Positions 3,683-58,013 of a stretch of 64,000 bases of DNA are shown here, one piece after another. How positions within the stretch are numbered: position 1 is the first letter of the stretch; every line of letters begins with the position of its first letter. The stretch covers positions 62,001-126,000 of IMG/VR virus record IMGVR_UViG_3300046660_000488, one strand, 5' to 3'. Made by a program: the position numbers and the translations under genes. Below the pieces are notes generated by a model. The model was given only the letters and a program-made list of their open reading frames with translations, did no database searches and had not been told where the DNA came from.

Positions 3683-4876
3683 GTGGACTTGAAGAACGTC
3701 ATCACCCCCAGCCTGCAACGTCTTCACGACGTTCTGACCAAGAGGGACCACGGTCTGTGGTTCGTCGGCGGGATGGTGCGTGACCTTCTGCTTGGCATCG
3801 AGCCCAAGGACGTGGACCTGTGCACCACCGCGACGCCCGAGCAGATGATCGCCATCTTCACCGAAGAGGGCATCCGCTTCGAGCCGACCGGCCTTCAGCA
3901 CGGCACTCTGACCGTGATCATCGACGGCGAAGTCTACGAGATCACCACGCTGCGGATCGACACCGATCAGGACGGCCGCCACGCGACCGTGGTCTACACC
4001 ACAGACCTGATCCTCGATCTGGGCCGCCGCGACCTGACCATCAACGCGATGGCCATGGATTTCGACGGCAACCTGATCGACCCGTTCAACGGCGCCCAAG
4101 ACCTGACCGACAAGCGCATCCGCTTCGTCGGCAACCCAGATGACCGGATGCGGGAAGACTATCTCCGCATCCTGCGCTGGTTGCGCTTCCACGACCGGAT
4201 CGCCACCGGCACGCCGCTGGACGCCGATACCGTGGCTGCGGCGCGCCGCAACGCGGACGGTCTGCGGAAGATCAAGCGCGAGCGGGTCTGGATGGAAATG
4301 GCGAAGATCGTCTCGGGCAACAATGGCCCGCTGATGCTCCACAACATCTACGCCATGCAACTGGCCGACTGCATCGGCCTGCCTGCTCTGTATCGCCGCA
4401 CCGGGGACGTCTACCCGGACTGCCCGCCCGGCGGCATCGACCGCATGATGGACGTCGCCAAACTGTCCAGCAATCCCGTGACCCGGTTGGTCGCTGTGCT
4501 GAGGAACGAGGCGACGCACCTGCCCATCGCGTGGAAGTGGAGCGCTGAAGAGCGTGACCTGTGCATTTTCTTGGCCGAGCGGGTGGCGGCTCCCGGTTTC
4601 GGCTGGAAGCATATGCTGGCCGTCAGCGGCGTCCGTCGCGAATGGGTTCTGGAGTTGGCCTACCTGCGGGGAGGCCGCGAAGGTCTGTTCCAAGCCATCC
4701 GCGACTGGGACGTCCCGATGTTCCCGCTGAAGGGCGGCGACCTGATCGCGGAAAAGGGCTACAAGCCCGGCCCCATCGTCGGTGAGACCGTCAAGCACCT
4801 GAAGCACATCTGGGCGACGACCGAATATCTGGCGACCCGTGAAGAGCTTCTGAGGCTCGTCGTCACCAGTGCATAG
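3683..4876 (+). CDS. cca: CCA-adding tRNA nucleotidyltransferase (class II)
   Basis: VGGMVRDLLLG..PKDVDL, DLGRRDLTINAMA, EDYLRILRWLRF, ERVWMEMAK motifs. Confidence 0.93.
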   Translation: MDLKNVITPSLQRLHDVLTKRDHGLWFVGGMVRDLLLGIEPKDVDLCTTATPEQMIAIFTEEGIRFEPTGLQHGTLTVIIDGEVYEITTLRIDTDQDGRHATVVYTTDLILDLGRRDLTINAMAMDFDGNLIDPFNGAQDLTDKRIRFVGNPDDRMREDYLRILRWLRFHDRIATGTPLDADTVAAARRNADGLRKIKRERVWMEMAKIVSGNNGPLMLHNIYAMQLADCIGLPALYRRTGDVYPDCPPGGIDRMMDVAKLSSNPVTRLVAVLRNEATHLPIAWKWSAEERDLCIFLAERVAAPGFGWKHMLAVSGVRREWVLELAYLRGGREGLFQAIRDWDVPMFPLKGGDLIAEKGYKPGPIVGETVKHLKHIWATTEYLATREELLRLVVTSA

Positions 4877-13548: not shown

Positions 13549-14171
13549 TTTCCTTTGATGCGCGGGATTTCGCGCAGGATCAGGCCATAGTAATCCATGT
13601 AGGCTTTGTACTCCGGCATGGCCTCGATCTCGCGGAGCATGTCTTCAGGCGGCTTGGTCAGCGCAAACTGCGTGACCGCGATGGCGGTGGCCGGGTCCAC
13701 GTCGGGACGCATGGCCCACGCCAGAGCGTACTTGACCCCATCGCGCAGACGCCACGGGTCCTCGACCTCGGTGGCCAGCTTTTCGATGTAGCAGATCATG
13801 TAGTGCATCAGGGCTTGTTCATAGCCCGTTTGCTTGATGACGCGCGGCTCCGCCGTGCCGGTCAGGATGCTCTGAGCCACGTAGGCGGCCGAGCCATCTG
13901 CGGCGGCTTGATAGCGCAGCTTCTGCTCAACGTAGATCGCTTGGGCGAGGCCGGGCGTTGTCGGCTGGAGGCCCAAGTTCTCGTGCATGTCGGTGATCAT
14001 GGCGCGGAACTGCTCGGACGACGCCAGAATCTTCGCCGGGTCGAGTTCGACCGGCTTGATCTTCCGCACGTATTTCTTCGCGCCCTTGCCGACTTTCAAA
14101 CCCACGCTATGCCACCGTTTCTGGTTTACGAGAAACAGCAGCATAGCATCGTTTTGGTTGAAAGCAATCAC
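13545..14171 (-). CDS. Hypothetical protein (208 aa)
   Basis: Overlapping start/stop packing. Confidence 0.7.
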   Translation of the reverse strand: MIAFNQNDAMLLFLVNQKRWHSVGLKVGKGAKKYVRKIKPVELDPAKILASSEQFRAMITDMHENLGLQPTTPGLAQAIYVEQKLRYQAAADGSAAYVAQSILTGTAEPRVIKQTGYEQALMHYMICYIEKLATEVEDPWRLRDGVKYALAWAMRPDVDPATAIAVTQFALTKPPEDMLREIEAMPEYKAYMDYYGLILREIPRIKGK

Positions 14172-15406
14172 TCTTCGCCCAAGCTGGAGTACTTGTAGTC
14201 CCTCCAGTCGAGGCCGCCGATCAGGTCGCGGATACCGTCAACCCGAGCTTGCGTGCCAGCGGTCGGGTGAACCGCCTTGGCGATGGTCGCTCGGATCAGG
14301 TCAGCGGGGTCGGCGCCGCGCTTGATCAGGAACATGTACTGGGCCTCCGGCTGCTTCAGGTTCGCGTTGACGTACTGCGCGAATTCCTTCTGGTCGTCGA
14401 TCCGAATGCTGTCGTACAATTCCTTCACCTGAACAGCGCGCTCTTCCACCGCTGCGGCGAAGTCGGCCGCATAGGCTTCCACGGCCTTGCGGTCGTTCTC
14501 TTCCATGAACGGCTTGACGTCGTCCACGGTGTTGTGCGCGATCATCGCCAGCACGTCTTTCTCGTGCTGGAGGAAGTCCTTGGTCTTGTGAATCTGGCAG
14601 TACCAGAGGCCCTTGACCTTGTACATCCGGCCGTCGTGGAACCGGACGATGTAGCCTTCCATGCCCTGAACGTCGTGGACCTCAGCCATGAACGTCTCGA
14701 TGCTCTCCACGCCGCCGGGCAGGGCGCGCACGACTTCCATGCCCGCTTTCTCGGCGTGCCGCACCATCTTGTCGTACGGCATGTATCCGCCAAACAGGTT
14801 GTCGCGAAGCGCCAGCAAGACCAGACGGTCTTCCGGATAGTCGATGACGATCTTCTGCTTTCGCGAGCACCACTCGAACAGCGGCGTCCAGCCGTGGTTG
14901 ATCATGTTGGCCGCCCATTCCGCGTAATGCGGGTTGGCCTTGATCCACTCGTTGACCGGCTTGGCCACGTCGGTCTCGCCCATCTTCGTGCACCAGACGA
15001 GGCCGTCAGCCTGAGCCGGGCCAGCGCCCGTCCACATCGGGTTGATCATCGACCCGTCCATCTTTTCGAGGACGTGGTGCGGCTCCGACCAGTCGATCAC
15101 GTCGATCTGGCTCTCGGGCTTCTCACCGATGTTGAAGAACTTGGCGAACTTGCGCGCGAGGATGCGGCCGTCCTTGGAGAACGTCAGACCCCGGCATTCA
15201 CGCAGCACCGTGTACTCGCGGTTCAGCGCGGGATCGTCGGTGTTCGGGAACGGGAAAATGCCGTCGAAGCTGATGACGTAATTGAAGATCACGTAATCAC
15301 CACGGTCTGCTTCGATGAACGCGGACGTTCCAGTACGCGCGTTGTGGTTCGCAACAGCCTGACGCACTTCGTCAAGCGTGATGTTCATCGGGAAATGGTA
15401 TCGCAT
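14168..15406 (-). CDS. rnlA: RNA ligase, T4 Rnl1 family
   Basis: RECRG, KFFNIGE, motif I EKMDGSMI, FEW, EGYIV, MYKVK. Confidence 0.93.
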   Translation of the reverse strand: MRYHFPMNITLDEVRQAVANHNARTGTSAFIEADRGDYVIFNYVISFDGIFPFPNTDDPALNREYTVLRECRGLTFSKDGRILARKFAKFFNIGEKPESQIDVIDWSEPHHVLEKMDGSMINPMWTGAGPAQADGLVWCTKMGETDVAKPVNEWIKANPHYAEWAANMINHGWTPLFEWCSRKQKIVIDYPEDRLVLLALRDNLFGGYMPYDKMVRHAEKAGMEVVRALPGGVESIETFMAEVHDVQGMEGYIVRFHDGRMYKVKGLWYCQIHKTKDFLQHEKDVLAMIAHNTVDDVKPFMEENDRKAVEAYAADFAAAVEERAVQVKELYDSIRIDDQKEFAQYVNANLKQPEAQYMFLIKRGADPADLIRATIAKAVHPTAGTQARVDGIRDLIGGLDWRDYKYSSLGEE

Positions 15407-15759: not shown

Positions 15760-16353
15760 TTAGGCGGCGATGTCGGCGCGGTTCTTGATGATGCGGTCGA
15801 TGATGCCGAACTCCAGAGCCTGCTGGGGGCTCATGAAGTTGTCGCGTTCCATCGCCTTCTCGATGACTTCCAGCGGCTGGCCGGTGTTCTCGTGGAGCAT
15901 CCGGTGCAGGCGGCGCTGGATGTCCAGCATTTCGTCCATCTGGATTTTCATGTCCAAGGCGATGCCACGGCTACCGCCGCTCGGGTCGTGGATCATGATG
16001 CGCGAGTCCGGCAGGGCGTAGCGCTTGCCCTTCTGGCCAGCGGCCAGCAGCATGGCGCCCATCGAGCAGGCTTGACCCATGCACAGGGTCGCCACGTCCG
16101 GCTTGATGAAGTTCATCGTGTCGCGGATCGCCAGACCAGCGGTGACGACGCCGCCCGGCGAGTTGATGTACATCGTGATGTCATCGTCGCCTTGGCTTTC
16201 GAGGTAAAGCAACTGGGCGACGACGGTGGTGGACATGTTGTCCTCGACCGGACCGTTCAGGAAGACGATCCGGTGACGCAGCAACAGGCTGTAGATGTCG
16301 AACGCACGTTCGCCACGGCCGTCAGCCTCGACCACCATAGGAATGAGAGACAT
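15760..16353 (-). CDS. clpP: ATP-dependent Clp protease proteolytic subunit
   Basis: [17 protein letters not shown], catalytic Ser (ACSMG), His (MIHDP) and Asp (ERDNF) intact. Confidence 0.97.
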
Positions 16354-20886: not shown

Positions 20887-21186
20887 CTACTGTGCCAGCT
20901 TGTCGGGAACGGCTTCCAAGGGAAAACCATTCTTGGTCGCGTCGTTCCGAATCTTCGCGCAGTACCACTCCGCGACCTCACGAGTGTATTCACCAATTCG
21001 GGCGTAGCCCTCGGTGTGAACTTTCATCGTGAGTTCGAAGGCTTTGTCCTCGTCGAGGCCAAAAATGCTCTGGATCAGAGCCGTCACGAATTCCACCGGG
21101 GTGAAATTGTCGTTCAAGAGCCGGACCGCATAGCGCGACGGCGCCTTGAATTGGGTGCGTTCGAGAACGCCTTCTTGCGCGCTCAT
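20887..21186 (-). CDS. clpS: ClpS N-degron adaptor
   Basis: YAVRLLNDNFTPVEFV, VHTEG.A, TREVAE, GFPL. Confidence 0.92.
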   Translation of the reverse strand: MSAQEGVLERTQFKAPSRYAVRLLNDNFTPVEFVTALIQSIFGLDEDKAFELTMKVHTEGYARIGEYTREVAEWYCAKIRNDATKNGFPLEAVPDKLAQ

Positions 21187-25026: not shown

Positions 25027-26289
<1,263 letters not shown>

Positions 26290-28815: not shown

Positions 28816-30762
28816 ATGAGCATTCCCCAGCTTGACGACGATGACATCGAGAAGCTTGACGACTTCCAGCACGCACGTCTTCGCACCGAAATGTGGTTGG
28901 GATCGCGAGACCCGAACACCCTGAACGTCCTCGAATACGAGGCCGGGAAGCCGAAGGCTGTTGAGACGACTTGGGTTCCGGCGGTCTTCACGGCCTTCCG
29001 TGAAATCCTCGACAACGCTCTGGACGAAATGATCACGCGCGGATACGGCGACCGGCTCGATGTGAGCTACGATCCCGCCACCGCGACCTTCATGATCAAG
29101 GACAACGGCCGGGGCATCCCGATCAATTTCAACGAGAAACACAAGCAGTACTCCGCCACGATGGCGATGACTGAGACCAAGGCTGGCCGAAACTTCAAGG
29201 ACCGTGGCAACTCGCGCGGCCTGAACGGCGTCGGCGGCTCGGTGGTGAACTTCTGCTCGGAATACCTGACCATCGACGTCATCCGCGACAAGAAGCATTT
29301 CAACCAGCGCTTCAACGAAGGCACGGGCGAAAAGCTGATTATCGAAGACCCGATCATCATGCCGACCGGTTCCAAGGACACGGGCACGAAGGTCAAGGTG
29401 AAGCTGTCGCACAAGGTCTTCCACGACCTGACCCTGCCGGAGAGCTTCATCAAGGCCCGCGTCTTCGAAGTGGCCCTGTGCTACCCGAAGCTGAAGGTCT
29501 ACTACAACGGCAAGCTCGTTTCGGCTGGCAAGCAAGGCGTCGAGAAGACCCTGTTCGGCGACCGCAAGCCGATCACCATCACCGTAGACGCGGTGACCAA
29601 CGTCAAGACCGGCACGATCCTGCCCGACAACACGCCGGAAGTGGTCCAGCGGCCGTTCCTGAGCAAGTTCTGGCTGGTCCCGGCCTTCTTCGAGTCGAGC
29701 GGCGAGCACACCCACAGCCTCGTCAACTGCATCCCCACGTTCCACGGCGGCAAGCACGTGGACACGTTCAAGCGCGGGTTCTTCGCTGGCATGCTCTCGG
29801 CTCTGGCCTCGAAGAGCAAGGCCAAGAAACTGAACCCGAACCGGTCGGACATGGAAGACGGGATGTTGATCTACAACATCACGGAAATGGACTCGCCCGC
29901 CTTCGACAGCCAGTCCAAGACGCGCCTGATCAACGAGGAAGTGGCGTCGGTGATCCGCAAGGCTCTCGACGACCCGGACTTCTTCAAGGGCGTGATCCGC
30001 CGCAATCCGGAGTGGGTCGATATGATCTACGCCCGTTGCGCGGAGCGGACCAAGAAAACCGACGACGCCGAAGCCAACAAGCTGGCCAAGAAGAACCTGC
30101 GGACCAAGGTCGCCGACCTTGAAGACGCATCCGGCGCCGACCGTTCCAAGTGCATCCTGTTCATCGCCGAAGGCAAGTCGGCCGTGGCGGGCATGGTCGA
30201 GGCGCGCAACGCCATGATCCACGGTGGCCTCCCGCTGCGCGGCAAGGTGCTTAACGTGTTCGAGGAGTCCACCAAGACCGTCCTCGAAAACAAGGCCCTA
30301 AGCTCGATCATGAAGGCCGTAGGCCTGATCCCCGGCCAGCGCGTGAACCGCCACCAGCTTCGCTACGGCAAGATTTACATCACCACGGACGCCGACGAGG
30401 ATGGGAAGAACATCGCAGCCCTGCTGATCAACTTCTTCTTCACGATGTGGCCGGAGTTGTTCGATCCCGAGAAACCGCCGTACGTCTATCTGTTCGACAC
30501 CCCGCTGATCGTCGCAGTCAAAGGCAAGACGCGGAAATACTGGTACAACGAGGACTACGACGACTTCAACCCGGAGCAGTACAAGGACTGGAAGCTCACC
30601 CGCGCCAAGGGTCTGGCCGCCCTGAAGAAGGACGACTGGAAGTGGGTACTTGAAAATCCGAAGGCTACACCCATCACTGACGATGGCGAACTGAAAGAGG
30701 CGATGAACCTCTTGTTCAATCCGAAACTCGCTGATAAGCGAAAGGAATGGATCGGGATGTGA
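28816..30762 (+). CDS. DNA topoisomerase II large subunit (T4 gp39+60 / GyrB-like)
   Basis: EILDNALDE, DNGRGIP, GLNGVG, TOPRIM AEGKSA, PLRGK, TTDADEDG, KGLAAL. Confidence 0.96.
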   Translation: MSIPQLDDDDIEKLDDFQHARLRTEMWLGSRDPNTLNVLEYEAGKPKAVETTWVPAVFTAFREILDNALDEMITRGYGDRLDVSYDPATATFMIKDNGRGIPINFNEKHKQYSATMAMTETKAGRNFKDRGNSRGLNGVGGSVVNFCSEYLTIDVIRDKKHFNQRFNEGTGEKLIIEDPIIMPTGSKDTGTKVKVKLSHKVFHDLTLPESFIKARVFEVALCYPKLKVYYNGKLVSAGKQGVEKTLFGDRKPITITVDAVTNVKTGTILPDNTPEVVQRPFLSKFWLVPAFFESSGEHTHSLVNCIPTFHGGKHVDTFKRGFFAGMLSALASKSKAKKLNPNRSDMEDGMLIYNITEMDSPAFDSQSKTRLINEEVASVIRKALDDPDFFKGVIRRNPEWVDMIYARCAERTKKTDDAEANKLAKKNLRTKVADLEDASGADRSKCILFIAEGKSAVAGMVEARNAMIHGGLPLRGKVLNVFEESTKTVLENKALSSIMKAVGLIPGQRVNRHQLRYGKIYITTDADEDGKNIAALLINFFFTMWPELFDPEKPPYVYLFDTPLIVAVKGKTRKYWYNEDYDDFNPEQYKDWKLTRAKGLAALKKDDWKWVLENPKATPITDDGELKEAMNLLFNPKLADKRKEWIGM

Positions 30763-37011: not shown

Positions 37012-37212
37012 GTGAAGATTTCCACCGCTCGCAATCTCATCTTTGGTCTGTATGGCTTTTTCTTCTCGTTGTGCGCGGTGTTTGCCGTCGCGTGGGGCAC
37101 GCATGTCGTGGTTTGCATCAAGAACCATGAATACCTGTTTATGCTCGTCGGCGCCATCGCCTTCCCGGTCGCCGTCGTTCATGGGATTGGCATCTGGTTC
37201 GGAGTTTGGTAA
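37012..37212 (+). CDS. Small membrane protein
   Basis: Two TM segments; RBS AAGGA. Confidence 0.7.
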   Translation: MKISTARNLIFGLYGFFFSLCAVFAVAWGTHVVVCIKNHEYLFMLVGAIAFPVAVVHGIGIWFGVW

Positions 37213-37222
37213 ACCAAATCCT

Positions 37223-37633
37223 ATGACCAAGATCGAGCGCCAAGGCCTTCCGCAGTTCGCGACCACGACAGCCACTAAAATCTGGCTGGACATCATGAAG
37301 CGCAGCCGGGAAAAACTGATCAGGGAATCTGGTTGGGACCATGCCGCCGCCCTTCCAGTCGGGACATTTGTCCTCTGCGGCACGCGGCTCAATTGGTCTA
37401 TCGCTCGGGTCGGGTTCGACGTGGGTCCGGGGTTCGCACCGTCCGCCAAGCTGACGTCGCTGCGCGATCTGACATGGACGCTTTTCGACCGCGAATACCG
37501 GGAGAAATACGCCCCGGTGGAACCGTGGGACAGTGTGTTCTACGATTTCAAGAGTGACGCTGACTTGGCCGATTTCATCAAGGCGGCCTACAAAGTCGAA
37601 GGCCGCTTCCGAGACTGGTCGAACATCTGGTGA
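37223..37633 (+). CDS. Hypothetical protein
   Basis: Operon packing; FKSDADLADF motif variant. Confidence 0.65.
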   Translation: MTKIERQGLPQFATTTATKIWLDIMKRSREKLIRESGWDHAAALPVGTFVLCGTRLNWSIARVGFDVGPGFAPSAKLTSLRDLTWTLFDREYREKYAPVEPWDSVFYDFKSDADLADFIKAAYKVEGRFRDWSNIW

Positions 37634-42251: not shown

Positions 42252-42338
42252 GTTGTGATGACCGAGTGGTCGAAGGTGCGGGATTGCAACCCCCGTAGCG
42301 TAAAGCTCACGTGGGTTCGAATCCCACTCACAACTCCA
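42252..42338 (+). tRNA. tRNA-Cys(GCA) with atypical long variable arm
   Basis: CGGGA-TTGCAAC-CCCCG, U73-CCA, variable hairpin AGC-GTAAA-GCT. Confidence 0.88.
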
Positions 42339-42610: not shown

Positions 42611-42686
42611 GCTAGTGTAGCTCAGTTGGTAGAGCGTCGGCTTGTGGAGTCGATTGTCGCGGGTTCGAGCCCCGCCGCTAGTTCCA
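42611..42686 (+). tRNA. tRNA-His(GTG) lacking G-1 (G1.U72, U73)
   Basis: TCGGC-TTGTGGA-GTCGA; base -1 is T. Confidence 0.9.
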
Positions 42687-43541: not shown

Positions 43542-44160
43542 ATGTTGAGAGGCACGAGAATTCTGGAAGGCGACGAAGCCGTCGCCTACGCTAAGGTGAT
43601 CGACACGCTGCGGGTGTGTCTTCATTGAAGCTGGCTTCGAGGAAGTGATCCTTCCGGCGATCTGGGAACAGCAGACCTTCATTGATAAGGCTGGCCCCGA
43701 GATCGTCAACCAGATGTGGGCATTCAAGGACAAGGGCGACCGCCCTGTCTGCCTCATCCCCGAAGTCACCGGTCTCGTGCAAGAGACTTGGCGGGATACA
43801 TGGTCGAAGACGTGCAAGTCCAAGCGCATCTTCTACGTCTCCCGCTGCTACCGCTACGAACGCCCCCAAGCTGGGCGCTACCGTGAATTCACACAGTTCG
43901 GGGTAGAGTTGCTTGGGGACGTTCCCGGCGGGACCGAAGAGGTCAAAGGTCTGCTGATCGCCGTGCTCGACAAGCTCGGCCTCAGTTACCGGTTCAGCGA
44001 CGCGGTCAAGCGAGGCTTGACCTACTATGTCGAGGACGGCTTCGAGGTCGAATGTGAGAGCTTGGGCGCCCAGAAGCAGATCGCCGGTGGCGGTCGATAC
44101 GCGGAAGGGATCGGGTGGGCCATTGGTGTGGACCGCCTGCTGCTCGCGCTCTCGAAGTAG
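43542..44160 (+). CDS. hisS: Catalytic-domain-only histidyl-tRNA synthetase, made via +1 frameshift at 43620-43625 (205 aa)
   Basis: Frame-0 MLRGTR...TLRVCL joins frame+1 IEAGFEEVILP, gapless against HisRS motif 1; motif 2 RYERPQAGRYREFTQ; motif 3 GGGRY..GWAIGVDRL; no anticodon-binding domain. Confidence 0.88.
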
Positions 44161-44167
44161 TTTCTAT

Positions 44168-44243
44168 GGTGGTGGTAGTTCAGCGGTAGAACGCCAGACT
44201 GTGACTCTGGATGTCGCGGGTTCGATCCCCGTCCATCACCCCA
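44168..44243 (+). tRNA. tRNA-His(GTG) with canonical G-1:C73
   Basis: G-GTGGTGG/CCATCAC-C-CCA; CCAGA-CTGTGAC-TCTGG. Confidence 0.95.
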
Positions 44244-47183: not shown

Positions 47184-47681
47184 CTATTGGTTTTCGTCAA
47201 CCAATTTCAGGAGGTGTTCGGCGACCTCGCCGCGACCCAGAACCGGGTCAACGTACCAGACGCCCTTGCCTCCAGCAGCACGCCAGCGCTTGATGTTGAC
47301 GAAGAAATCGTCCACCAGCACGTCGCCCGGCGCCTTCATGTGGAGGGCCTTGTCCTTGCTTCGGCAGGTGATCACCGGAATCTCGTAGCCGTATTTCGAC
47401 CCGAAGTGCTTGGCGTACCATTCGACCTTGTGGGCGGCGGCGCGGTCATAGCCGGTTGCCGGACAGCCGGTCAGGATCGTCGGCTTGAAGGGCAGGACCA
47501 GATCGAAGAGATCGTAGGCCTCGTCCTTGACCGGCATGTCGAGCCAGAAATTGGGGTAATCCTCGACGCGAGCCCAAAGCTCCGCGTCGCCAAGTTCGCG
47601 GCAGGTCTTGCCCCACTGCGCGTATACGTGTTCGTCGAAGGCGGCCAGAACGCCGTCACTATCCAAGAAAATATGTGTCAT
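47184..47681 (-). CDS. HAD-family 5'(3')-deoxyribonucleotidase-like protein
   Basis: FLDSDGVLA, FWLDMP, LTG, K.EW, LVDD, W..AGG.G. Confidence 0.85.
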   Translation of the reverse strand: MTHIFLDSDGVLAAFDEHVYAQWGKTCRELGDAELWARVEDYPNFWLDMPVKDEAYDLFDLVLPFKPTILTGCPATGYDRAAAHKVEWYAKHFGSKYGYEIPVITCRSKDKALHMKAPGDVLVDDFFVNIKRWRAAGGKGVWYVDPVLGRGEVAEHLLKLVDENQ

Positions 47682-47998: not shown

Positions 47999-48073
47999 TG
48001 GCGCCTTCAGCCGGGCTCGAACCGGCGACCTACAGATTTAGAGTCTGCTGCTCTACCGCTGAGCTATGAAGGC
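47999..48073 (-). tRNA. Amber suppressor tRNA (CTA), G73
   Basis: GCCTTCA/TGAAGGC, GCAGA-CTCTAAA-TCTGT, GGTTCGAGCC, CCA encoded. Confidence 0.92.
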
Positions 48074-48079
48074 GTCCTT

Positions 48080-48155
48080 TGGTGATCACAGTCGGGCTCG
48101 AACCGACGACCCGCAGATTTAGAGTCCGCTGCTCTACCAACTGAGCTATGCAATC
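48080..48155 (-). tRNA. Amber suppressor tRNA (CTA), A73
   Basis: GATTGCA/TGTGATC, GCGGA-CTCTAAA-TCTGC, CCA encoded; TTGACC promoter upstream. Confidence 0.92.
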
Positions 48156-48208
48156 AGACCAAAGACGATCAAACATCTATCAGGCCATTCCAATCTGGTC
48201 AACCAAAA

Positions 48209-48547
48209 TCAGTCCAGATCGTTCAGGCGGCTGGTCACGTCGTGCTCGCCGTTGATGCGGCGATAGCGACCGGTCAGCTTTTTGGCCCAGCGCTTGCCAT
48301 AGCCCCAGACTTCGTCGTGGGAGCAATAGCCGCGAGGGGTCTTGCGGTGCGGCGCGCAGACAGGCATTTGGGCGCCATAGCTGTCGCGACCGTGGAACCA
48401 GTGTTCCTTGTTGAAGTCGTTGGCGTCGCTGAGGTGACGAGCACGACGAGGGGCAGTCACGCCGGGGGCGTGCTTGGCCTTGGCGTTCTCGTAGTGGCGT
48501 TCACCGGGGTGATAGCCGGGGAGGCGACGACGGGTGGTTCGAGACAT
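48209..48547 (-). CDS. Basic Arg/His-rich hypothetical protein
   Basis: Start MSRTTRR with AGGAG RBS. Confidence 0.65.
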   Translation of the reverse strand: MSRTTRRRLPGYHPGERHYENAKAKHAPGVTAPRRARHLSDANDFNKEHWFHGRDSYGAQMPVCAPHRKTPRGYCSHDEVWGYGKRWAKKLTGRYRRINGEHDVTSRLNDLD

Positions 48548-48661
48548 CGGTTTTCTCCTGTGCGGAAATGCACAATCGAAAACCGGAGACGGCGAGTACG
48601 GCCATGCTGGTCGATCCTCAAAAAGTTGAGCCGCCACTATATAGCGACGGCTCGTCTTTCG

Positions 48662-49153
48662 TCAACCAGATTGTGGCCGATGTTTCGCAAGTAGAGTGGC
48701 GAGCAGAGCCCGTTCTGCCTCGTCTTGCTTCACTTGTCGCGCCGCAGCAGCTTCCGCCGATTTCCTCGCGGCTTCCTGAGCAGCCGCTTCGACGGCCGCC
48801 AGATGCTTGATCCACGTCTCCGACGACGTCAGTTTGTTTTCGTCGAAGTAGGTGGTCGCGATGGTGATGCTGATGCCGTCGAAGCCGACCGAATCGTGGT
48901 CGTCCCATTGGCCCTTGCCCGGCATTTCGTTCCGGACCTTGTAGGCGGCCATGCGCTCGTACAGTTCGTCGAGGCTGTTGGCCGTCAGGACTTCGGTCTC
49001 CGAGCCCGTCTCGCGCAGGTAGTTGTCGCGGTTGTTGCGATACTGGGTCGTCGTCGCGTTGACGTTGAACTGGACGGCCGGGGCGCCGTCGTAATCGTCT
49101 TCGTGATAGTCGAGCCCAACGATGTCGAGCTTTTCCACGGTGATGGTGTCCAT
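48662..49153 (-). CDS. Hypothetical protein
   Basis: Start MDTITV with AGGAG RBS. Confidence 0.7.
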   Translation of the reverse strand: MDTITVEKLDIVGLDYHEDDYDGAPAVQFNVNATTTQYRNNRDNYLRETGSETEVLTANSLDELYERMAAYKVRNEMPGKGQWDDHDSVGFDGISITIATTYFDENKLTSSETWIKHLAAVEAAAQEAARKSAEAAAARQVKQDEAERALLATLLAKHRPQSG

Positions 49154-49211: not shown

Positions 49212-49775
49212 TTAGGCCGCCTCTTGCACGGCCCGCACGGCGGCGGGCGTGATGAAGGCGTGGCCGCCCGCTTCGATCCGCAGATCGGCTCGACGGATAC
49301 GCAGAAGTCCTCGGGTCGAGCCCTCGTCCTTCTCCATGGTCTCAAAACCCTGCGTGCTCTCGAAATGAGAGACGTAATAGGTCTTGCCGCCGGTCTTCAA
49401 CGTCCACTTGGGCAAGAAGGGAAACTCGATGGAGCCCTTGTTGAAGTGGAAGTCGATGAACCGGCAGTTCGTCGCCGTCAGCGGGAACAGGGCTTCCTGT
49501 TCCGCCAGCGCCTTGTGCATGCCAAGGATACGATCCCGGCGCGCCTCGGCGTCTTTGATCATCGCGAGCATCTTTCGCGCCATGGCCTGCTGAGAGGCCA
49601 GTTCACGGTGGAGACTCGGGGCAGAGTCGTGCTTCAGCCGAGCGGCGTTCTTGGCCTTGCGCTTGGCGACGGTGATTTCCGCCGACAGTCGCTTGTAGAC
49701 CACACGCCATTGGGCTCGCCACGCAAGGTAGCTTTCCCGGTCGGTGAAGGTGGGGAACATCGCATAAGCGCTCAT
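49212..49775 (-). CDS. Hypothetical protein, N-terminus paralogous to 49790-50068
   Basis: FTDRESYLAWRAQWR. Confidence 0.75.
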   Translation of the reverse strand: MSAYAMFPTFTDRESYLAWRAQWRVVYKRLSAEITVAKRKAKNAARLKHDSAPSLHRELASQQAMARKMLAMIKDAEARRDRILGMHKALAEQEALFPLTATNCRFIDFHFNKGSIEFPFLPKWTLKTGGKTYYVSHFESTQGFETMEKDEGSTRGLLRIRRADLRIEAGGHAFITPAAVRAVQEAA

Positions 49776-52398: not shown

Positions 52399-53061
52399 AT
52401 GGCTCGCAGAAAGCCTGCGCGCGGACCTGTGTCCGTGCAGCAAACGGAGTATACGCCTACTGTCGTGGAATTTATCCTCGACGAGACCGGCTCCATGACG
52501 AAGCATAAGACCGCAACGGTCAACGGCTTCAACGATTTCCTAAATGAACAGAAAGCACAGCAAGGCACTTGCCTGCTGACCCTGACCAAGTTCCACACCG
52601 GAATTGGCCAGACGTCGCCGTACGTCGATCTCGACATCGGCATGGTCCCAAGCATGAAGTACGACTGGTTTGTTCCGGGCGACTCAACTAATCTTCGGGA
52701 CACTGTCGGCCAGCGATTGGCTGCTCTTCGTGAGCGGCTTTCGACGTGGTCGGTCAAACCGAAGGTTCTCTTCGTGATCATGACCGATGGTGGCGACAAT
52801 GCCAGCAGACAATACAGCGTCAAAGACCTGAACCTCGCGATCACGCAAGCGATCCAAGAAGATGGTCACAACTTTATGTTCCTCGGAGCAGACCAAGACG
52901 CTACGGCGGTCGGCCTGTCCTTTGGTATCCCCGCCGGGAACATCAAGTCCTTCAGCAGTTCAGAGTTCCGCGAGACCATGCAAACGGTCTCCGCAGCAAC
53001 GTCTGCTTTCCGTGCTTCGTCGTCTTACACCGACGCCGATCTGTTCAAGACCGCAATCTAA
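52399..53061 (+). CDS. vWA domain protein
   Basis: FILDETGSM, STNLRD, VIMTDGGDNAS, FLGA; AGGAG RBS. Confidence 0.85.
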   Translation: MARRKPARGPVSVQQTEYTPTVVEFILDETGSMTKHKTATVNGFNDFLNEQKAQQGTCLLTLTKFHTGIGQTSPYVDLDIGMVPSMKYDWFVPGDSTNLRDTVGQRLAALRERLSTWSVKPKVLFVIMTDGGDNASRQYSVKDLNLAITQAIQEDGHNFMFLGADQDATAVGLSFGIPAGNIKSFSSSEFRETMQTVSAATSAFRASSSYTDADLFKTAI

Positions 53062-53073
53062 GGCTATACTCAA

Positions 53074-54015
53074 ATGTTGCAGAACCAATACGAAATCCGG
53101 GTGCTGGTCAAAGGCCGCCCCATCGCTGAATACTACCACAACGGCCAGACCTTCATTGAAGGCCGTGACGGCTCCAACTTCGAAATCCAGTTCCGGAACC
53201 TGACCAACCAGCGTGTGGAAGCACTGGTCGCGGTCGATGGTCGTTCGGTAGTGGATGGCGACGAAGCCAGCCCCGAAAGCCGTGGCTTCGTGGTCGCCGC
53301 GCACGAGACCATCGTGATCCCCGGCTGGAAGCTTGACGCTGAACAAGCCGCCGCCTTCCTGTTCGCGGGGAAGCAGCAAAGCTACTCGGCCGCGATGTCA
53401 GGCGGCAAGTCGCACAACACCGGCGTCCTCGGCGTCATGGTGTTCAAGGAGAAGGTCGCACGGACGGCGTTCACCGGCGGTGGCATCATGCGCTCGCGGT
53501 TCGCCTCTCCGGGCGTGTCTCCGCAGATCACCGACTATTCCTACTACGGTGACCCGATCCGTCCTACCTACGGCGCGGCAGGCCATCTGGGTGGCGTCGG
53601 CATGAGCCGTTCGGCGTCTTCGTCGCGCACGAAGGGCATTCCGACGACGCTGGAGAACACCTTCGCTGGCGCGAAGCTGTCGGCTGACACGGCCTACACG
53701 TCGTCCACCATGGACTGGATGGACATGGAGCAAACCCGTAGCATGGCTTCGGTCCAGCCGCAGAACGCCGTCGAGCAGACTCTGGGCACTGGCTTTGGCC
53801 AAGCTCAGGATTTCAAGACGCAGGAGATCGAGTTCAATCGTGGCGATCTCGCGTCGCAGATGGTCCTCTACTACGACGACGCCCGTGGCCTGCGCGCCCG
53901 TGGCATCGAACTGAGCCGTAAGAAGGCGGTTCGCGTGCAGACCACCCAACCGGACGCTTTCCCCGGTTTCAAGAAGCAGACGGGATGCAAGCCGCCTCCC
54001 GGCTGGCAGGGCTAA
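53074..54015 (+). CDS. Conserved hypothetical protein co-transcribed with vWA gene
   Basis: FEIQFRN..RVEA.VAVDG.SV.DG, IPGW, NTGVLGV, TLGTGFG. Confidence 0.8.
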   Translation: MLQNQYEIRVLVKGRPIAEYYHNGQTFIEGRDGSNFEIQFRNLTNQRVEALVAVDGRSVVDGDEASPESRGFVVAAHETIVIPGWKLDAEQAAAFLFAGKQQSYSAAMSGGKSHNTGVLGVMVFKEKVARTAFTGGGIMRSRFASPGVSPQITDYSYYGDPIRPTYGAAGHLGGVGMSRSASSSRTKGIPTTLENTFAGAKLSADTAYTSSTMDWMDMEQTRSMASVQPQNAVEQTLGTGFGQAQDFKTQEIEFNRGDLASQMVLYYDDARGLRARGIELSRKKAVRVQTTQPDAFPGFKKQTGCKPPPGWQG

Positions 54016-56924: not shown

Positions 56925-58013
56925 ATGGAACTGATCACGAAACTGTCGGACGCCAAGCTGATCTCGCCGCCCAAGTGGCTTGCGGCTGGGACGGTCTACG
57001 CCACGATCACGGGCTCGATGGCCTATGGCGTCAACTTGGACGACTCGGATCAGGACGTCTATGGCGTTGCGATCCCGCCCAAGCAAGTCATCTTCCCGCA
57101 CACCAACGGCGTCATCGCCGGGTTCGGGGACCAAGGTGAAGTGTTCGAGCAATGGACCGAACACCACATCAAGGACCCTAGCGGCCGGATGGAGTACGAC
57201 TTCACGATCAGCAGCATCGTGAAGTATTTCCAACTGTGCATGCAGAACAACCCGAACATGATCGACACCCTGTTCACGCCTGACAACTGCGTGATCCATC
57301 GCACCCCGATCAGCGACCTCATCCGGACCAACCGGCGGATGTTCCTGCACAAGGGCGCGTGGCACAAGTTCAAGGGCTACGCCTTCTCGCAGATGGCGCG
57401 CTACACGTCGGCCAACGAAAACCAGAAAGTCGGCCGGGTCGTGAAGTACATGCTGGATCACGAGATCGCCAACGAGGATTTCTATCTGCGTCTCATGGCA
57501 GAATCCACTCGCCGGACCATCCTGAGTGACGGGGGTGAATATACCAGCGAGGGCAATACTGGCATGCGGCATCTGTCCGACAAAGAGTTGGTCGATTTCG
57601 CTGGGATGGTCAAAGGCCTGACTGAGCGCCAGATCAAGACGGTCGAGGCGGGCATGGACACCAAGTCCATGTACCACATCGTCCGCCTGATGAACGAGGT
57701 CGAGCAAATCTTGACGACCGGTGATCTGGACCTCCAGCAGAACCGGGAGCAGATGAAATCGGTCCGTCGTGGCGAATGGACTGTCGAGCGCATGAAGGAA
57801 TGGTTCGAGACCAAGGAAATCTCGCTGGAACAGGTCTATCTGGACAGCAAGCTTCCTCACAGTCCTGACGAAGACGCGATCCGTCGCTTGCTTCTTCAGT
57901 GCTTGGAACAGGCCTACGGCAACCTCGACAACCTGATCAATCGGGAAGTCGATCACGGGAAGCTGGCCTTGATGCGAGACATCCGCGCCTTGCTGGAAAC
58001 GCACGGCGGGTAG
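56925..58013 (+). CDS. Pol-beta-type nucleotidyltransferase (RlaP/NrdC.11-like)
   Basis: TGSMAYG...SDQDVYGV, NNPN.IDTLF, KGYA, K..YH.VRL. Confidence 0.85.
   Translation: MELITKLSDAKLISPPKWLAAGTVYATITGSMAYGVNLDDSDQDVYGVAIPPKQVIFPHTNGVIAGFGDQGEVFEQWTEHHIKDPSGRMEYDFTISSIVKYFQLCMQNNPNMIDTLFTPDNCVIHRTPISDLIRTNRRMFLHKGAWHKFKGYAFSQMARYTSANENQKVGRVVKYMLDHEIANEDFYLRLMAESTRRTILSDGGEYTSEGNTGMRHLSDKELVDFAGMVKGLTERQIKTVEAGMDTKSMYHIVRLMNEVEQILTTGDLDLQQNREQMKSVRRGEWTVERMKEWFETKEISLEQVYLDSKLPHSPDEDAIRRLLLQCLEQAYGNLDNLINREVDHGKLALMRDIRALLETHGG

What the first reader, a model, noticed from the sequence alone, without database searches (positions are those of the whole stretch)
47999..48155. Tandem pair of amber (CUA) suppressor tRNAs in a genome that is not amber-recoded
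Seen: two intact tRNAs with CT-CTA-AA loops, encoded CCA and their own TTGACC promoter. They differ in acceptor stem and discriminator (G73 vs A73). The AGAGCAG..GACT-NNN-AATC..GGTCG context resembles tRNA-Lys, one base from CTT. Long genes are intact in code 11 and about ten genes end in TAG (e.g. cca, clpS, hisS, 56925-58013). Inference: conditional readthrough with two different amino acids, rescue from premature stops, or an early stage of stop-codon reassignment.
Basis: partly seen in the sequence, partly recalled or inferred. Interest (0 to 1): 0.7.

Follow-up and report, generated by a model that had tools for sequence, protein, structure and literature searches.

The report
Paired amber-suppressor tRNAs of a megaphage
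Two intact tRNAs that read the UAG stop codon sit side by side in a 578-kb soil bacteriophage that otherwise uses the normal genetic code; the same "one A73 plus one G73" pair recurs in related giant phages (it was already reported, unexplained, in phage XacN1), so it is a conserved but still unexplained tool rather than a sign of a changing code.

Summary
Window 48155-48080 and 48073-47999 (minus strand) encode two canonical tRNAs with CUA anticodons and encoded CCA. They differ mainly in acceptor stem and discriminator (A73 vs G73). The "genome" is a complete 578,292-bp rhizosphere megaphage with 69 tRNAs and about nine aaRS-like genes. Standard code fits best in every 10-kb bin. TAG ends 96 of 677 called genes. 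I found no gene interrupted by TAG and no conserved extension after a TAG stop. The pair is not unique. Four related giant phages (XacN1, Phosso and two IMG/VR genomes, 34-46% protein identity) and two further contigs each carry at least one A73 and one G73 CUA tRNA. Within a phage the tRNA cores are homogenised (59/59 identical in XacN1) while the acceptor ends stay different, which points to selection for two charging identities. No phage aaRS is shared by all five, so host enzymes must charge them, at least in XacN1. Conserved genes of the four relatives almost avoid TAG (0-3.5%); this phage does not (13.6%). Best reading: working amber suppressors causing partial UAG readthrough in infected cells, purpose unproven. 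XacN1's pair was published in 2018, so this is a new member of a known, unexplained kind.

The parts
48080..48155 (-). tRNA(CUA), 76 nt, discriminator A73, acceptor GATTGCA/TGTGATC, CCA encoded; first gene of the pair
   Evidence: ARAGORN; Rfam RF00005 63.2 bits; sequence; family covariation
47999..48073 (-). tRNA(CUA), 75 nt, discriminator G73, acceptor GCCTTCA/TGAAGGC, CCA encoded; second gene, 6 nt downstream of the first
   Evidence: ARAGORN; Rfam RF00005 72.3 bits. Its acceptor+73 matches the G73 copy of XacN1 at 11/15 positions, although the cores match at only 43/59
48174..48202 (-). Possible promoter: TTGACC, 17-nt spacer, TAGATG, ending 18 nt before the first tRNA. The -35 part is good, the -10 part poor
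   Evidence: Pattern unique in the window. Not accepted by the sigma-70 consensus scan. Phosso has TTGACA-17-TAGAAC before its A73 CUA tRNA
48636..48665 (-). Consensus-like sigma-70 promoter (TTGACG-18-TATAGT) upstream of ORF 48209-48637. It could alternatively drive a transcript that runs into the tRNA pair

Best explanation
The two genes are working amber-suppressor tRNAs carried by a standard-code megaphage of the XacN1/Phosso clade. They are this phage's copy of a conserved two-member module: one CUA tRNA with A73 and one with G73.

Shown here:
- The tRNAs are canonical and under structural selection.
- The module recurs in related phages.
- The acceptor ends are kept different while the cores are homogenised.
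- None of these phages has in-frame TAG codons.
- No phage-encoded synthetase is common to all carriers.

Inferred mechanism:
- The tRNAs are transcribed in the infected cell and matured. CCA is encoded, and the phage also has a CCA-adding enzyme and an Rnl1-type ligase.
- A37 is probably isopentenylated, because A36-A37-A38 is the MiaA motif (from memory).
- They are charged by host synthetases of two different identities. The A73 copy most likely goes to LysRS (U35, A73, A31-U39, Lys-like body). The G73 copy goes to a G73-dependent enzyme, GlnRS where the host has one and otherwise unknown.
- They then compete with RF1 at ordinary UAG stop codons, so UAG-ended reading frames are partly read through to the next stop.

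Inferred purpose, the weakest step: no phage gene needs them, and the conserved genes of four sister phages have almost purged TAG stops. I therefore take the readthrough to fall mainly on host messages, as a host-takeover or perturbation device that the phages' own genes avoid. This phage has not purged TAG. Among the five it is the only one with an RF1-like release factor gene, which might offset suppression at its own stops.
For: - Real tRNAs. Fifteen of 21 stem pairs show compensatory changes across 21 family members.
- Conserved module: XacN1 tandem A73 then G73; G001 syntenic tandem A73 then G73 followed by a terminator; Phosso G73 + A73 and G002 2 x A73 + G73; contigs L013 and L018.
- The five complete genomes are one clade: 53-207 reciprocal best hits at 34-46% identity.
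- Selection on the acceptor end: XacN1 core 59/59 identical but acceptor+73 2/15; this phage 52/59 against 7/15; the G73 copies of this phage and XacN1 share acceptor 11/15 but core only 43/59.
- No recoding.
- No TAG-interrupted gene. No conserved extension or conserved TAG stop.
- Host charging: the aaRS sets differ among the five and XacN1 has none. This phage has no class II LysRS, AsnRS or GlnRS.
- Lys/Gln inference: CUA tRNAs are taken by E. coli LysRS through U35, A31-U39 favours LysRS and C31-G39 favours GlnRS (PMC1483225). Lys is the nearest or near-nearest own isotype of most A73 copies.
- TAG avoidance in conserved genes of the relatives: G001 4/147, G002 5/159, Phosso 5/142, XacN1 0/65, against 20/147 here.
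- The RF1-like gene occurs only in this phage among the five.
Against: - Nothing shows expression, charging or suppression. Only DNA runs hold the sequence.
- In this phage TAG stops are not depleted: 14% of genes, TAG/(TAG+TGA) 0.22 against a trinucleotide baseline of 0.24, and 13.6% of conserved genes.
- There is no excess of back-up stops after TAG. Efficient suppression would therefore extend many of the phage's own proteins.
- TAG avoidance in the relatives could simply reflect the usual TAA preference of highly expressed genes and their lower GC. I ran no control phage lacking CUA tRNAs.
- The G73 acceptor (G1-C72, C2-G71) does not look like tRNA-Gln.
- If the host is an alphaproteobacterium (suggested by the G-1-less tRNA-His), it may lack GlnRS (from memory).
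- In G001 the A73 partner has a long variable arm, so the A73 copies may not all carry the same amino acid.
- The host-directed purpose is reached by elimination, not by evidence.
Confidence: 0.5

Rival explanations
1. Host-range hedging. The two tRNAs do the same job with the same amino acid, but carry alternative acceptor/discriminator identity sets, so that at least one is charged in whichever host the phage enters (or one by a phage enzyme and one by a host enzyme).
For: Diverged duplicates with different discriminators are a genome-wide theme in this phage: Cys U73/A73, Glu A73/G73, Gln U73/G73, Asn A73/G73, Lys A73/U73. The two tRNA-His genes in the window belong to the two identity types known to be orthogonal. 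One lacks G-1 and has G1.U72; the other has G-1 and C73 (PMC3875453). XacN1 is reported to have a wide host range (PMC5852040).
Against: For most synthetases a change of discriminator changes the identity rather than tuning it. No known single enzyme uses A73 in some bacteria and G73 in others together with a CUA anticodon. The G73 acceptor is conserved across phages with hosts as different as Xanthomonas and (probably) alphaproteobacteria.
Confidence: 0.15
2. Programmed readthrough of a few phage genes that end in TAG, giving C-terminally extended isoforms.
For: 96 genes of this phage end in TAG, and 11 have a coding-like in-frame continuation of at least 40 codons.
Against: - Those continuations are neighbouring genes with their own Shine-Dalgarno and start codon.
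- Their frequency equals that after TGA and is lower than after TAA.
- No TAG stop is conserved among orthologues beyond chance: 4 coincidences seen against about 3 expected over ten genome pairs.
- Apparent alignments past stops are noise.
- The XacN1 authors also found nothing behind its 18 TAG stops.
Confidence: 0.1
3. An intermediate on the way to TAG reassignment (Borges et al. model: loss of TAG stops, gain of suppressor tRNA, then in-frame TAG in late genes).
For: TAG stops are rare in XacN1 (9/467), Phosso (27/517) and G002 (39/596) and almost absent from their conserved genes. This is the state predicted to precede recoding (bioRxiv 10.1101/2021.08.26.457843).
Against: Five genomes separated by 34-46% protein identity all keep the module and none has in-frame TAG. 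The state is therefore stable. This phage and G001 still use TAG for 12-14% of genes. This phage carries an RF1-like gene, not the RF2 found in TAG-recoded phages. GC is 47-59%, not the low GC linked to recoding.
Confidence: 0.1
4. Insurance against nonsense mutations. In a GC-rich 578-kb genome most one-step nonsense mutations give TAG (from CAG, AAG, GAG, TGG), and suppressors inserting Lys and Gln would restore many of them.
For: The two likeliest inserted residues are one-step neighbours of UAG (inference). The genome is very large and 59% GC.
Against: The selective benefit per generation would be tiny compared with the cost of reading through 14% of the phage's own stops. Relatives with 47-52% GC keep the module too. 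Nothing tests this directly.
Confidence: 0.08
5. Not used in decoding: a decoy, regulator, primer or neutral passenger within the large tRNA arrays of these phages.
For: No target is known. The phage carries other odd tRNAs whose use is unclear.
Against: The loop is the optimal suppressor type (U33, CUA, A37, A38). The cloverleaf is kept by compensatory changes. Selection acts precisely on the acceptor/discriminator end, which matters for aminoacylation. The module has survived long divergence.
Confidence: 0.07

Closest known systems
The two tRNA-Sup(CUA) genes of Xanthomonas jumbo phage XacN1 (Yoshikawa et al. 2018, PMC5852040)
   Same: Tandem pair on one strand a few nucleotides apart, A73 copy first and G73 copy second, in a standard-code giant phage with a near-complete tRNA set. 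The G73 acceptor stems match at 11/15 positions. The phages share 68 orthologues.
   Different: In XacN1 the pair lies in the 66-kb terminal repeat (so four copies), next to a tmRNA gene. The two cores are identical. TAG stops are nearly purged and there are no phage aaRS genes. Here there is a single pair, cores 52/59 identical, TAG stops common, about nine aaRS-like genes and an RF1-like gene.
Single CUA tRNAs of other cultured jumbo phages (Ralstonia phage RsoM2USA, PMC8504454; Sinorhizobium phage Phosso, PV764938)
   Same: CUA tRNA in a standard-code giant phage with tens of tRNAs. Phosso's A73 copy is 53/59 identical in the core to the A73 copy here.
   Different: They are annotated as one suppressor or 'tRNA-Pyl'. 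Phosso in fact has a second, G73, CUA tRNA 275 kb away, so the two are not always adjacent.
Suppressor tRNAs of TAG-recoded (code 15) phages: crAss-like, Lak and others (Borges et al.; Peters et al., PMC9523058)
   Same: Phage-encoded CUA tRNA acting in a standard-code host and probably charged by host enzymes.
   Different: Those phages have in-frame TAG in structural and lysis genes, low coding density in code 11, low GC, often RF2, and TAG = Gln. None of this holds here.
Classical bacterial amber suppressors (E. coli supE Gln, supF Tyr, Lys-inserting CUA tRNAs)
   Same: Same anticodon and loop type. U35-driven acceptance by LysRS or GlnRS is documented for CUA tRNAs (PMC1483225).
   Different: Those are single-base mutants of cellular tRNAs and are recognisable as such. 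These have no clear parent isotype in the phage and are conserved wild-type genes.

Membership tests
Canonical elongator tRNA (Rfam RF00005) | Covariance-model score above the 29-bit gathering threshold | tested here: met
   72.3 and 63.2 bits, model positions 1-71 of 71
Canonical elongator tRNA (Rfam RF00005) | Cloverleaf kept by compensatory changes among relatives | tested here: met
   15 of 21 pairs have double changes that keep the pair in 21 related CUA tRNAs. The D arm and anticodon loop were fixed by my search pattern and say nothing.
Amber suppressor tRNA | Anticodon CUA in a 7-nt loop with U33 and a purine at 37 | tested here: met
   Loop CTCTAAA in both genes
Amber suppressor tRNA | Is aminoacylated in the cell | not testable with these tools
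   Only DNA runs hold the sequence. Identity is inferred from A73/G73, U35 and A31-U39.
Amber suppressor tRNA | Causes UAG readthrough in vivo | not testable with these tools
   Indirect only: TAG stops are rare in conserved genes of four sister phages but not in this one.
tRNA-Pyl (ARAGORN's label) | Atypical body: 3-nt variable loop, 6-bp anticodon stem, small D loop without G18G19 (from memory) | tested here: not met
   Both have G18G19, a 5-bp anticodon stem, a 5-nt variable loop and a normal T loop. ARAGORN's label follows the anticodon only.
tRNA-Pyl (ARAGORN's label) | PylRS encoded nearby or in the genome | tested here: not met
   The only PF01409-family gene is classed by NCBIfam as 'PheS-related mystery ligase SrmL' (438 bits), not PylS. 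It is absent from the four relatives that keep CUA tRNAs.
Suppressor tRNA of a stop-codon-recoded phage (code 15) | In-frame TAG in phage genes; higher coding density when TAG is sense | tested here: not met
   Density 0.833 in code 11 against 0.803 with TAG as sense. No 10-kb bin gains more than 0.05 with TAG as sense; one bin, 470-480 kb, gains 0.05, from 0.64 to 0.69. No TAG-interrupted gene.
Suppressor tRNA of a stop-codon-recoded phage (code 15) | Phage RF2 (reads UAA/UGA) often present | tested here: not met
   One RF-family gene only, closest to RF1, with PxT-type motif PPT and GGQ
XacN1-type CUA tRNA pair of giant phages | One A73 and one G73 CUA tRNA in the same genome | tested here: met
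XacN1-type CUA tRNA pair of giant phages | Carrier phage related to XacN1 and using the standard code | tested here: met
   68 reciprocal best hits with XacN1, 132-187 with Phosso, G002 and G001. All use the standard code.

The most novel reading that the evidence does not exclude
A clade of standard-code megaphages has maintained, over long divergence and by selection on the acceptor end, a two-identity amber-suppressor module (A73 + G73). The module makes UAG ambiguous, with two amino acids plus stop, in infected cells. This would be a stable third state between the standard code and reassignment, used as a weapon or regulator rather than for reading the phage's own genes. In this phage it may be counterbalanced by an RF1-like factor whose own synthesis is gated by an in-frame UGA. 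A speculative extension: readthrough of host messages feeds non-stop ribosomes into tmRNA tagging and the phage-encoded ClpXP/ClpS system.
Probability: 0.25. Interest if true: 0.75.

Novelty: new member of a known kind. Interest (0 to 1): 0.5.

Why it matters
Suppressor tRNAs in phages are usually read as the signature of a recoded genome. Here a whole clade of giant, cultivable or complete phages keeps amber suppressors while reading TAG as stop. It keeps them in two charging flavours. If the tRNAs act as inferred, these phages deliberately loosen one stop codon in the infected cell. That bears on how stop-codon reassignment starts (or fails to start), on host takeover by megaphages that bring their own translation kit, and on annotation, where 'tRNA-Pyl' or 'tRNA-Sup' calls should not trigger code 15. 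XacN1 and Phosso are in culture, so the question is directly testable. If the tRNAs turn out to be idle, the finding is only a curiosity of large phage tRNA arrays.

Tried and rejected
- Regional or gene-specific TAG recoding: rejected. Evidence: code comparison in 10-kb bins; extensions after stops; same-frame neighbours and their junctions; upstream-stop analysis; constructs with X at the stop compared with relatives.
- Back-up stops after TAG: no enrichment.
- A release factor linked to the module: the RF1-like gene is present only in this phage among the five, so it is not part of the conserved module.
- A dedicated synthetase: the PheS-related 'SrmL' ligase was an attractive candidate, being of the PylRS/PheRS class. 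It is absent from G001, G002, XacN1 and Phosso. No other aaRS is shared by all five.
- A conserved protein neighbour: ORF 49212-49775 recurs near CUA tRNAs in three loci, but Pfam, PHROGs and the Atlas give nothing. It is probably synteny only.
- Parent isotype of the tRNAs: no clear parent. Lys, Trp and Arg are all within 0.77-0.82 core identity.
- TAG-recoded carriers of the same tRNA family, which could have revealed the inserted residue: none among 15 IMG/VR loci.
- Expression: no RNA run holds the region. Read laying was not used, because contigs cannot show RNA ends.
- Single-sequence folding gives near-cloverleaf minimum-energy structures with unremarkable z-scores, as is usual for tRNAs, and is not informative.

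Full report
**What is at the coordinates**

ARAGORN finds two tRNA genes with anticodon CUA on the minus strand, at 48080-48155 and 47999-48073. Rfam's general tRNA model scores them 63.2 and 72.3 bits over its full length, against a threshold of 29.

Read from the sequence, both have:
- U8 and A14, and a 4-bp D stem with G18G19;
- a 5-bp anticodon stem ending in A31-U39;
- the loop C32-U33-C-U-A-A37-A38;
- a 5-nt variable loop, a T loop TTCGA and an encoded CCA.

The first gene has acceptor stem GATTGCA/TGTGATC (two G.U pairs) and discriminator A73. The second, 6 nt downstream, has GCCTTCA/TGAAGGC and G73. The ARAGORN label 'tRNA-Pyl' only reflects the anticodon; the bodies are ordinary class-I tRNAs.

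TTGACC, 17 nt and TAGATG end 18 nt before the first tRNA, and the pattern is unique in the window. The -10 part fails the consensus scan. That scan finds a better promoter at 48665-48636, in front of the preceding ORF.

**What the genome is**

The window is bases 62001-126000 of a single 578,292-bp contig with 59% GC. It is an IMG/VR virus record with direct terminal repeats, rated complete.

It carries 69 tRNA genes grouped by amino acid, usually in two or more diverged copies. No UCA or UUA suppressor was called.

Phage-type genes in the window include:
- a CCA-adding enzyme, a T4 Rnl1-type RNA ligase, ClpX and both subunits of a type II topoisomerase;
- an ART-PolyVal domain protein;
- ClpP and ClpS;
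- an RlaP-family nucleotidyltransferase.

The only public runs that hold the sequence are DNA from rhizosphere or soil metagenomes.

Genome-wide the phage also encodes ArgRS, TyrRS, TrpRS, a short ThrRS, SerRS, AspRS, GluRS, a 171-aa HisRS core and a 'PheS-related mystery ligase SrmL'. It has no class II LysRS, AsnRS or GlnRS.

**Is TAG a stop here?**

A self-trained codon-usage gene caller gives 677 genes and 83% coding density. Stops are TGA 332, TAA 249 and TAG 96.

- Treating TAG, TGA or TAA as sense lowers density and total coding score, and no 10-kb bin clearly prefers TAG as sense.
- Extensions after TAG stops are no longer than after TGA or TAA.
- Nine TAG-ended genes are followed in frame by another gene. 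Where the junction is clear it shows a Shine-Dalgarno and a start codon, often TAG-GAGG-N-ATG.
- The rate of such pairs is 9% after TAG, 7% after TGA and 14% after TAA.
- Looking upstream of every gene gives the same answer: 4% for TAG, 3.9% for TGA and 13.7% for TAA.
- TAG/(TAG+TGA) among stops is 0.22, equal to the trinucleotide baseline of 0.24.

So the genome is not amber-recoded, globally or locally, and TAG is not avoided.

**Relatives**

BLAST of the pair against GenBank phages found two relevant records. Xanthomonas phage XacN1 has an annotated tandem 'tRNA-Sup x2'. Sinorhizobium phage Phosso has a 'tRNA-Pyl(cta)'.

A pattern scan of IMG/VR for the D arm plus a CUA loop gave 15 loci, seven of them on contigs of 240-608 kb.

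I fetched four whole genomes:
- G001, 607,744 bp;
- G002, 462,455 bp;
- XacN1, 384,670 bp;
- Phosso, 469,473 bp.

 All five genomes share 53-207 reciprocal best hits at 34-46% identity. All are standard-code by the same test.

Each has at least one A73 and one G73 CUA tRNA:
- XacN1 has A73 then G73 in tandem, inside the terminal repeat.
- G001 has A73 then G73, 1 nt apart and followed by a terminator, flanked by homologues of window ORFs 49212-49775 and 47184-47681, so it is syntenic.
- Phosso has G73 and A73 far apart.
- G002 has two A73 and one G73.
- Contigs L013 and L018 also hold one of each.

If A and G were equally likely and independent, seven mixed sets out of seven would have a chance of about 1%.

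**Selection on the acceptor end**

In an alignment of 21 family members, 15 of 21 stem pairs show compensatory double changes.

Within XacN1 the two tRNAs are identical at all 59 core columns but at only 2 of 15 acceptor+discriminator columns. In this phage the figures are 52/59 and 7/15. Between phages the reverse holds for the G73 copies: acceptor 11/15 but core 43/59.

The cores are therefore homogenised within a genome, by gene conversion or repeated duplication. Meanwhile two distinct acceptor ends are preserved, and the G73 type (G1-C72, C2-G71, pyrimidine-rich 5' strand) is conserved across phages.

The acceptor stem and discriminator matter chiefly for aminoacylation. This is the strongest argument that both tRNAs are charged and that the two are meant to be charged differently.

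**Who charges them, and with what**

No phage synthetase is common to the five carriers, and XacN1 has none. Host enzymes must therefore do it, at least there. The SrmL ligase was checked for this reason and is confined to this phage.

For E. coli it is documented that CUA tRNAs are accepted by LysRS through U35. A31-U39 favours LysRS and C31-G39 favours GlnRS (PMC1483225). Both tRNAs here have A31-U39. Across the family the 31:39 pair varies (A-U 9, C.A 5, C-G 4, U-A 3) and is shared by the two members of a pair, so it does not separate the types.

The A73 copies have tRNA-Lys as nearest or near-nearest own isotype in four of five genomes. The G73 copies have no consistent parent.

From memory, the class IIb enzymes all read U35 and differ in discriminator (Lys A73; Asp and Asn G73). 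GlnRS needs G73 and readily takes CUA tRNAs.

My inference is Lys for the A73 copy and Gln, or another G73-dependent residue, for the G73 copy.

Caveats:
- The G73 acceptor does not resemble tRNA-Gln.
- The host may be an alphaproteobacterium without GlnRS.
- G001's A73 copy has a long variable arm, which suggests a Tyr- or Leu-like identity there.

**What they act on**

No in-frame TAG exists to be decoded.

No TAG stop is conserved among orthologues beyond chance. Between this phage and G001 the count is 0 of 23, and over all ten genome pairs there are four coincidences against about three expected.

Constructs with X at the stop, compared with the relatives' genomes, gave two hits across TAG, and both are alignment noise. 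The XacN1 authors reached the same negative result for 18 TAG stops.

What does differ is TAG usage in conserved genes (reciprocal hits in at least two other genomes):
- G001: 4/147;
- G002: 5/159;
- Phosso: 5/142;
- XacN1: 0/65;
- this phage: 20/147.

 The four relatives thus avoid TAG where it would matter, as expected if amber suppression is real in infected cells. The usual TAA preference of well-expressed genes and their lower GC could contribute, and I ran no control phage.

This phage is the exception, and it is also the only one of the five with a release-factor gene.

**The release-factor gene (outside the window, genome about 29,988-30,683)**

It is closest to RF1 (NCBIfam and PDB). 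It lacks domain 1 and keeps a PxT-type motif (PPT) and GGQ. It has an in-frame TGA where uninterrupted homologues have Trp or Phe.

Of 47 classifiable homologues on IMG/VR contigs, 17 have an in-frame stop at or near this place, and it is always TGA. Twenty change frame by +1, and 7 are uninterrupted. That resembles the UGA-dependent autoregulation of bacterial prfB, but in an RF1-like protein. I did not take it further.

It is not part of the conserved suppressor module. An RF1-like factor would oppose amber suppression, which is why I mention it as a possible reason that this phage tolerates TAG stops.

**Comparison with what is known**

Phage suppressor tRNAs are well known in recoded phages. 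There they go with in-frame TAG or TGA in late genes, low coding density in code 11, low GC and sometimes RF2. None of that applies here.

CUA tRNAs in standard-code jumbo phages have been reported and left unexplained: two in XacN1 and one in RsoM2USA. The present pair is a further member of that kind.

In the papers I read I did not find three points:
- the two copies are systematically one A73 and one G73;
- this holds across a clade;
- the acceptor ends are held apart while the cores are homogenised.

I cannot exclude that these points are noted elsewhere.

**Verdict**

The most likely mechanism is partial UAG readthrough by two host-charged suppressors in infected cells. The purpose is unproven. 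By elimination, and from the TAG avoidance of sister phages, I favour an effect aimed at host translation.

Confidence is about 0.75 that they are functional suppressors, about 0.5 for the mechanism as stated, and lower for the purpose.

Noticed in passing
window 42252-42338 (+); also genome 42360-42445, 508664-508748 c, 508998-509082 c, 516221-516306, 516932-517019: Six tRNAs of 85-88 nt have a long variable arm and a Tyr/Ser-like D arm but anticodons of class-I amino acids: Cys GCA, Thr UGU, Lys UUU and CUU, Gln UUG, Asn GUU. Each sits beside a normal-length isoacceptor. G001's A73 CUA tRNA has the same build. They could be mistranslators, nuclease-resistant substitutes or ARAGORN artefacts.
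   Followed up: no
window 42611-42686, 43645-44160, 44169-44243 (+): Two tRNA-His genes of the two known orthogonal identity types: one without G-1, with G1.U72 and U73; one with encoded G-1 and C73. They flank a 171-aa HisRS catalytic core with motifs 1-3 but no anticodon-binding domain, which ends in TAG. The mini-HisRS is 66-78% identical in G001 and Phosso. In G001 it sits beside a G-1-less tRNA-His, so which tRNA it serves is open.
   Followed up: partly
genome 29,988-30,683 = L003 1175-1869 (+), outside the window: RF1-like release factor without domain 1, with PPT and GGQ motifs and an in-frame TGA at a Trp/Phe position. Among 47 IMG/VR homologues, 17 have an in-frame TGA (never TAG or TAA), 20 have a +1 frame change there and 7 are uninterrupted. 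This looks like a conserved UGA-gated recoding site in a phage release factor, although this phage is not TGA-recoded.
   Followed up: partly
genome 520,228-521,463 = L183 228-1463 (+), directly after a tRNA array: NCBIfam equivalog 'PheS-related mystery ligase SrmL' (438 bits against a cut-off of 300). It is a single-chain PheRS-alpha-like enzyme of unknown substrate, absent from the four related phages. No paper found.
   Followed up: partly
window 15760-16353, 20887-21186, 25027-26289 (-); XacN1 37201-37621; G001 576377-576796: The phage encodes ClpP, ClpS and ClpX. The relatives XacN1 and G001 encode a permuted tmRNA, in XacN1 only 1 kb from the CUA pair. No tmRNA was found in this phage. 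There is a possible link between readthrough, non-stop rescue and proteolysis; this is speculation.
   Followed up: no
whole genome compared with G001, G002, XacN1, Phosso: TAG ends 13.6% of conserved genes in this phage but 0-3.5% in its four relatives. This phage is also the GC-richest (59% against 47-52%) and the only one with an RF1-like gene.
   Followed up: partly
window 52399-53061 and 53074-54015 (+): Two adjacent genes in the same frame, separated by TAA plus 12 nt. G001 keeps the same in-frame arrangement at 603156-601603. Genome-wide, same-frame neighbours are about twice as common after TAA (14%) as after TGA or TAG. This is probably tight operon packing and was not examined.
   Followed up: no
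window 3683-4876 (+), 14168-15406 (-), 56925-58013 (+): A tRNA maintenance set: CCA-adding enzyme, T4 Rnl1-type RNA ligase and an RlaP-family nucleotidyltransferase. It fits a phage that replaces or repairs the tRNA pool of its host.
   Followed up: no
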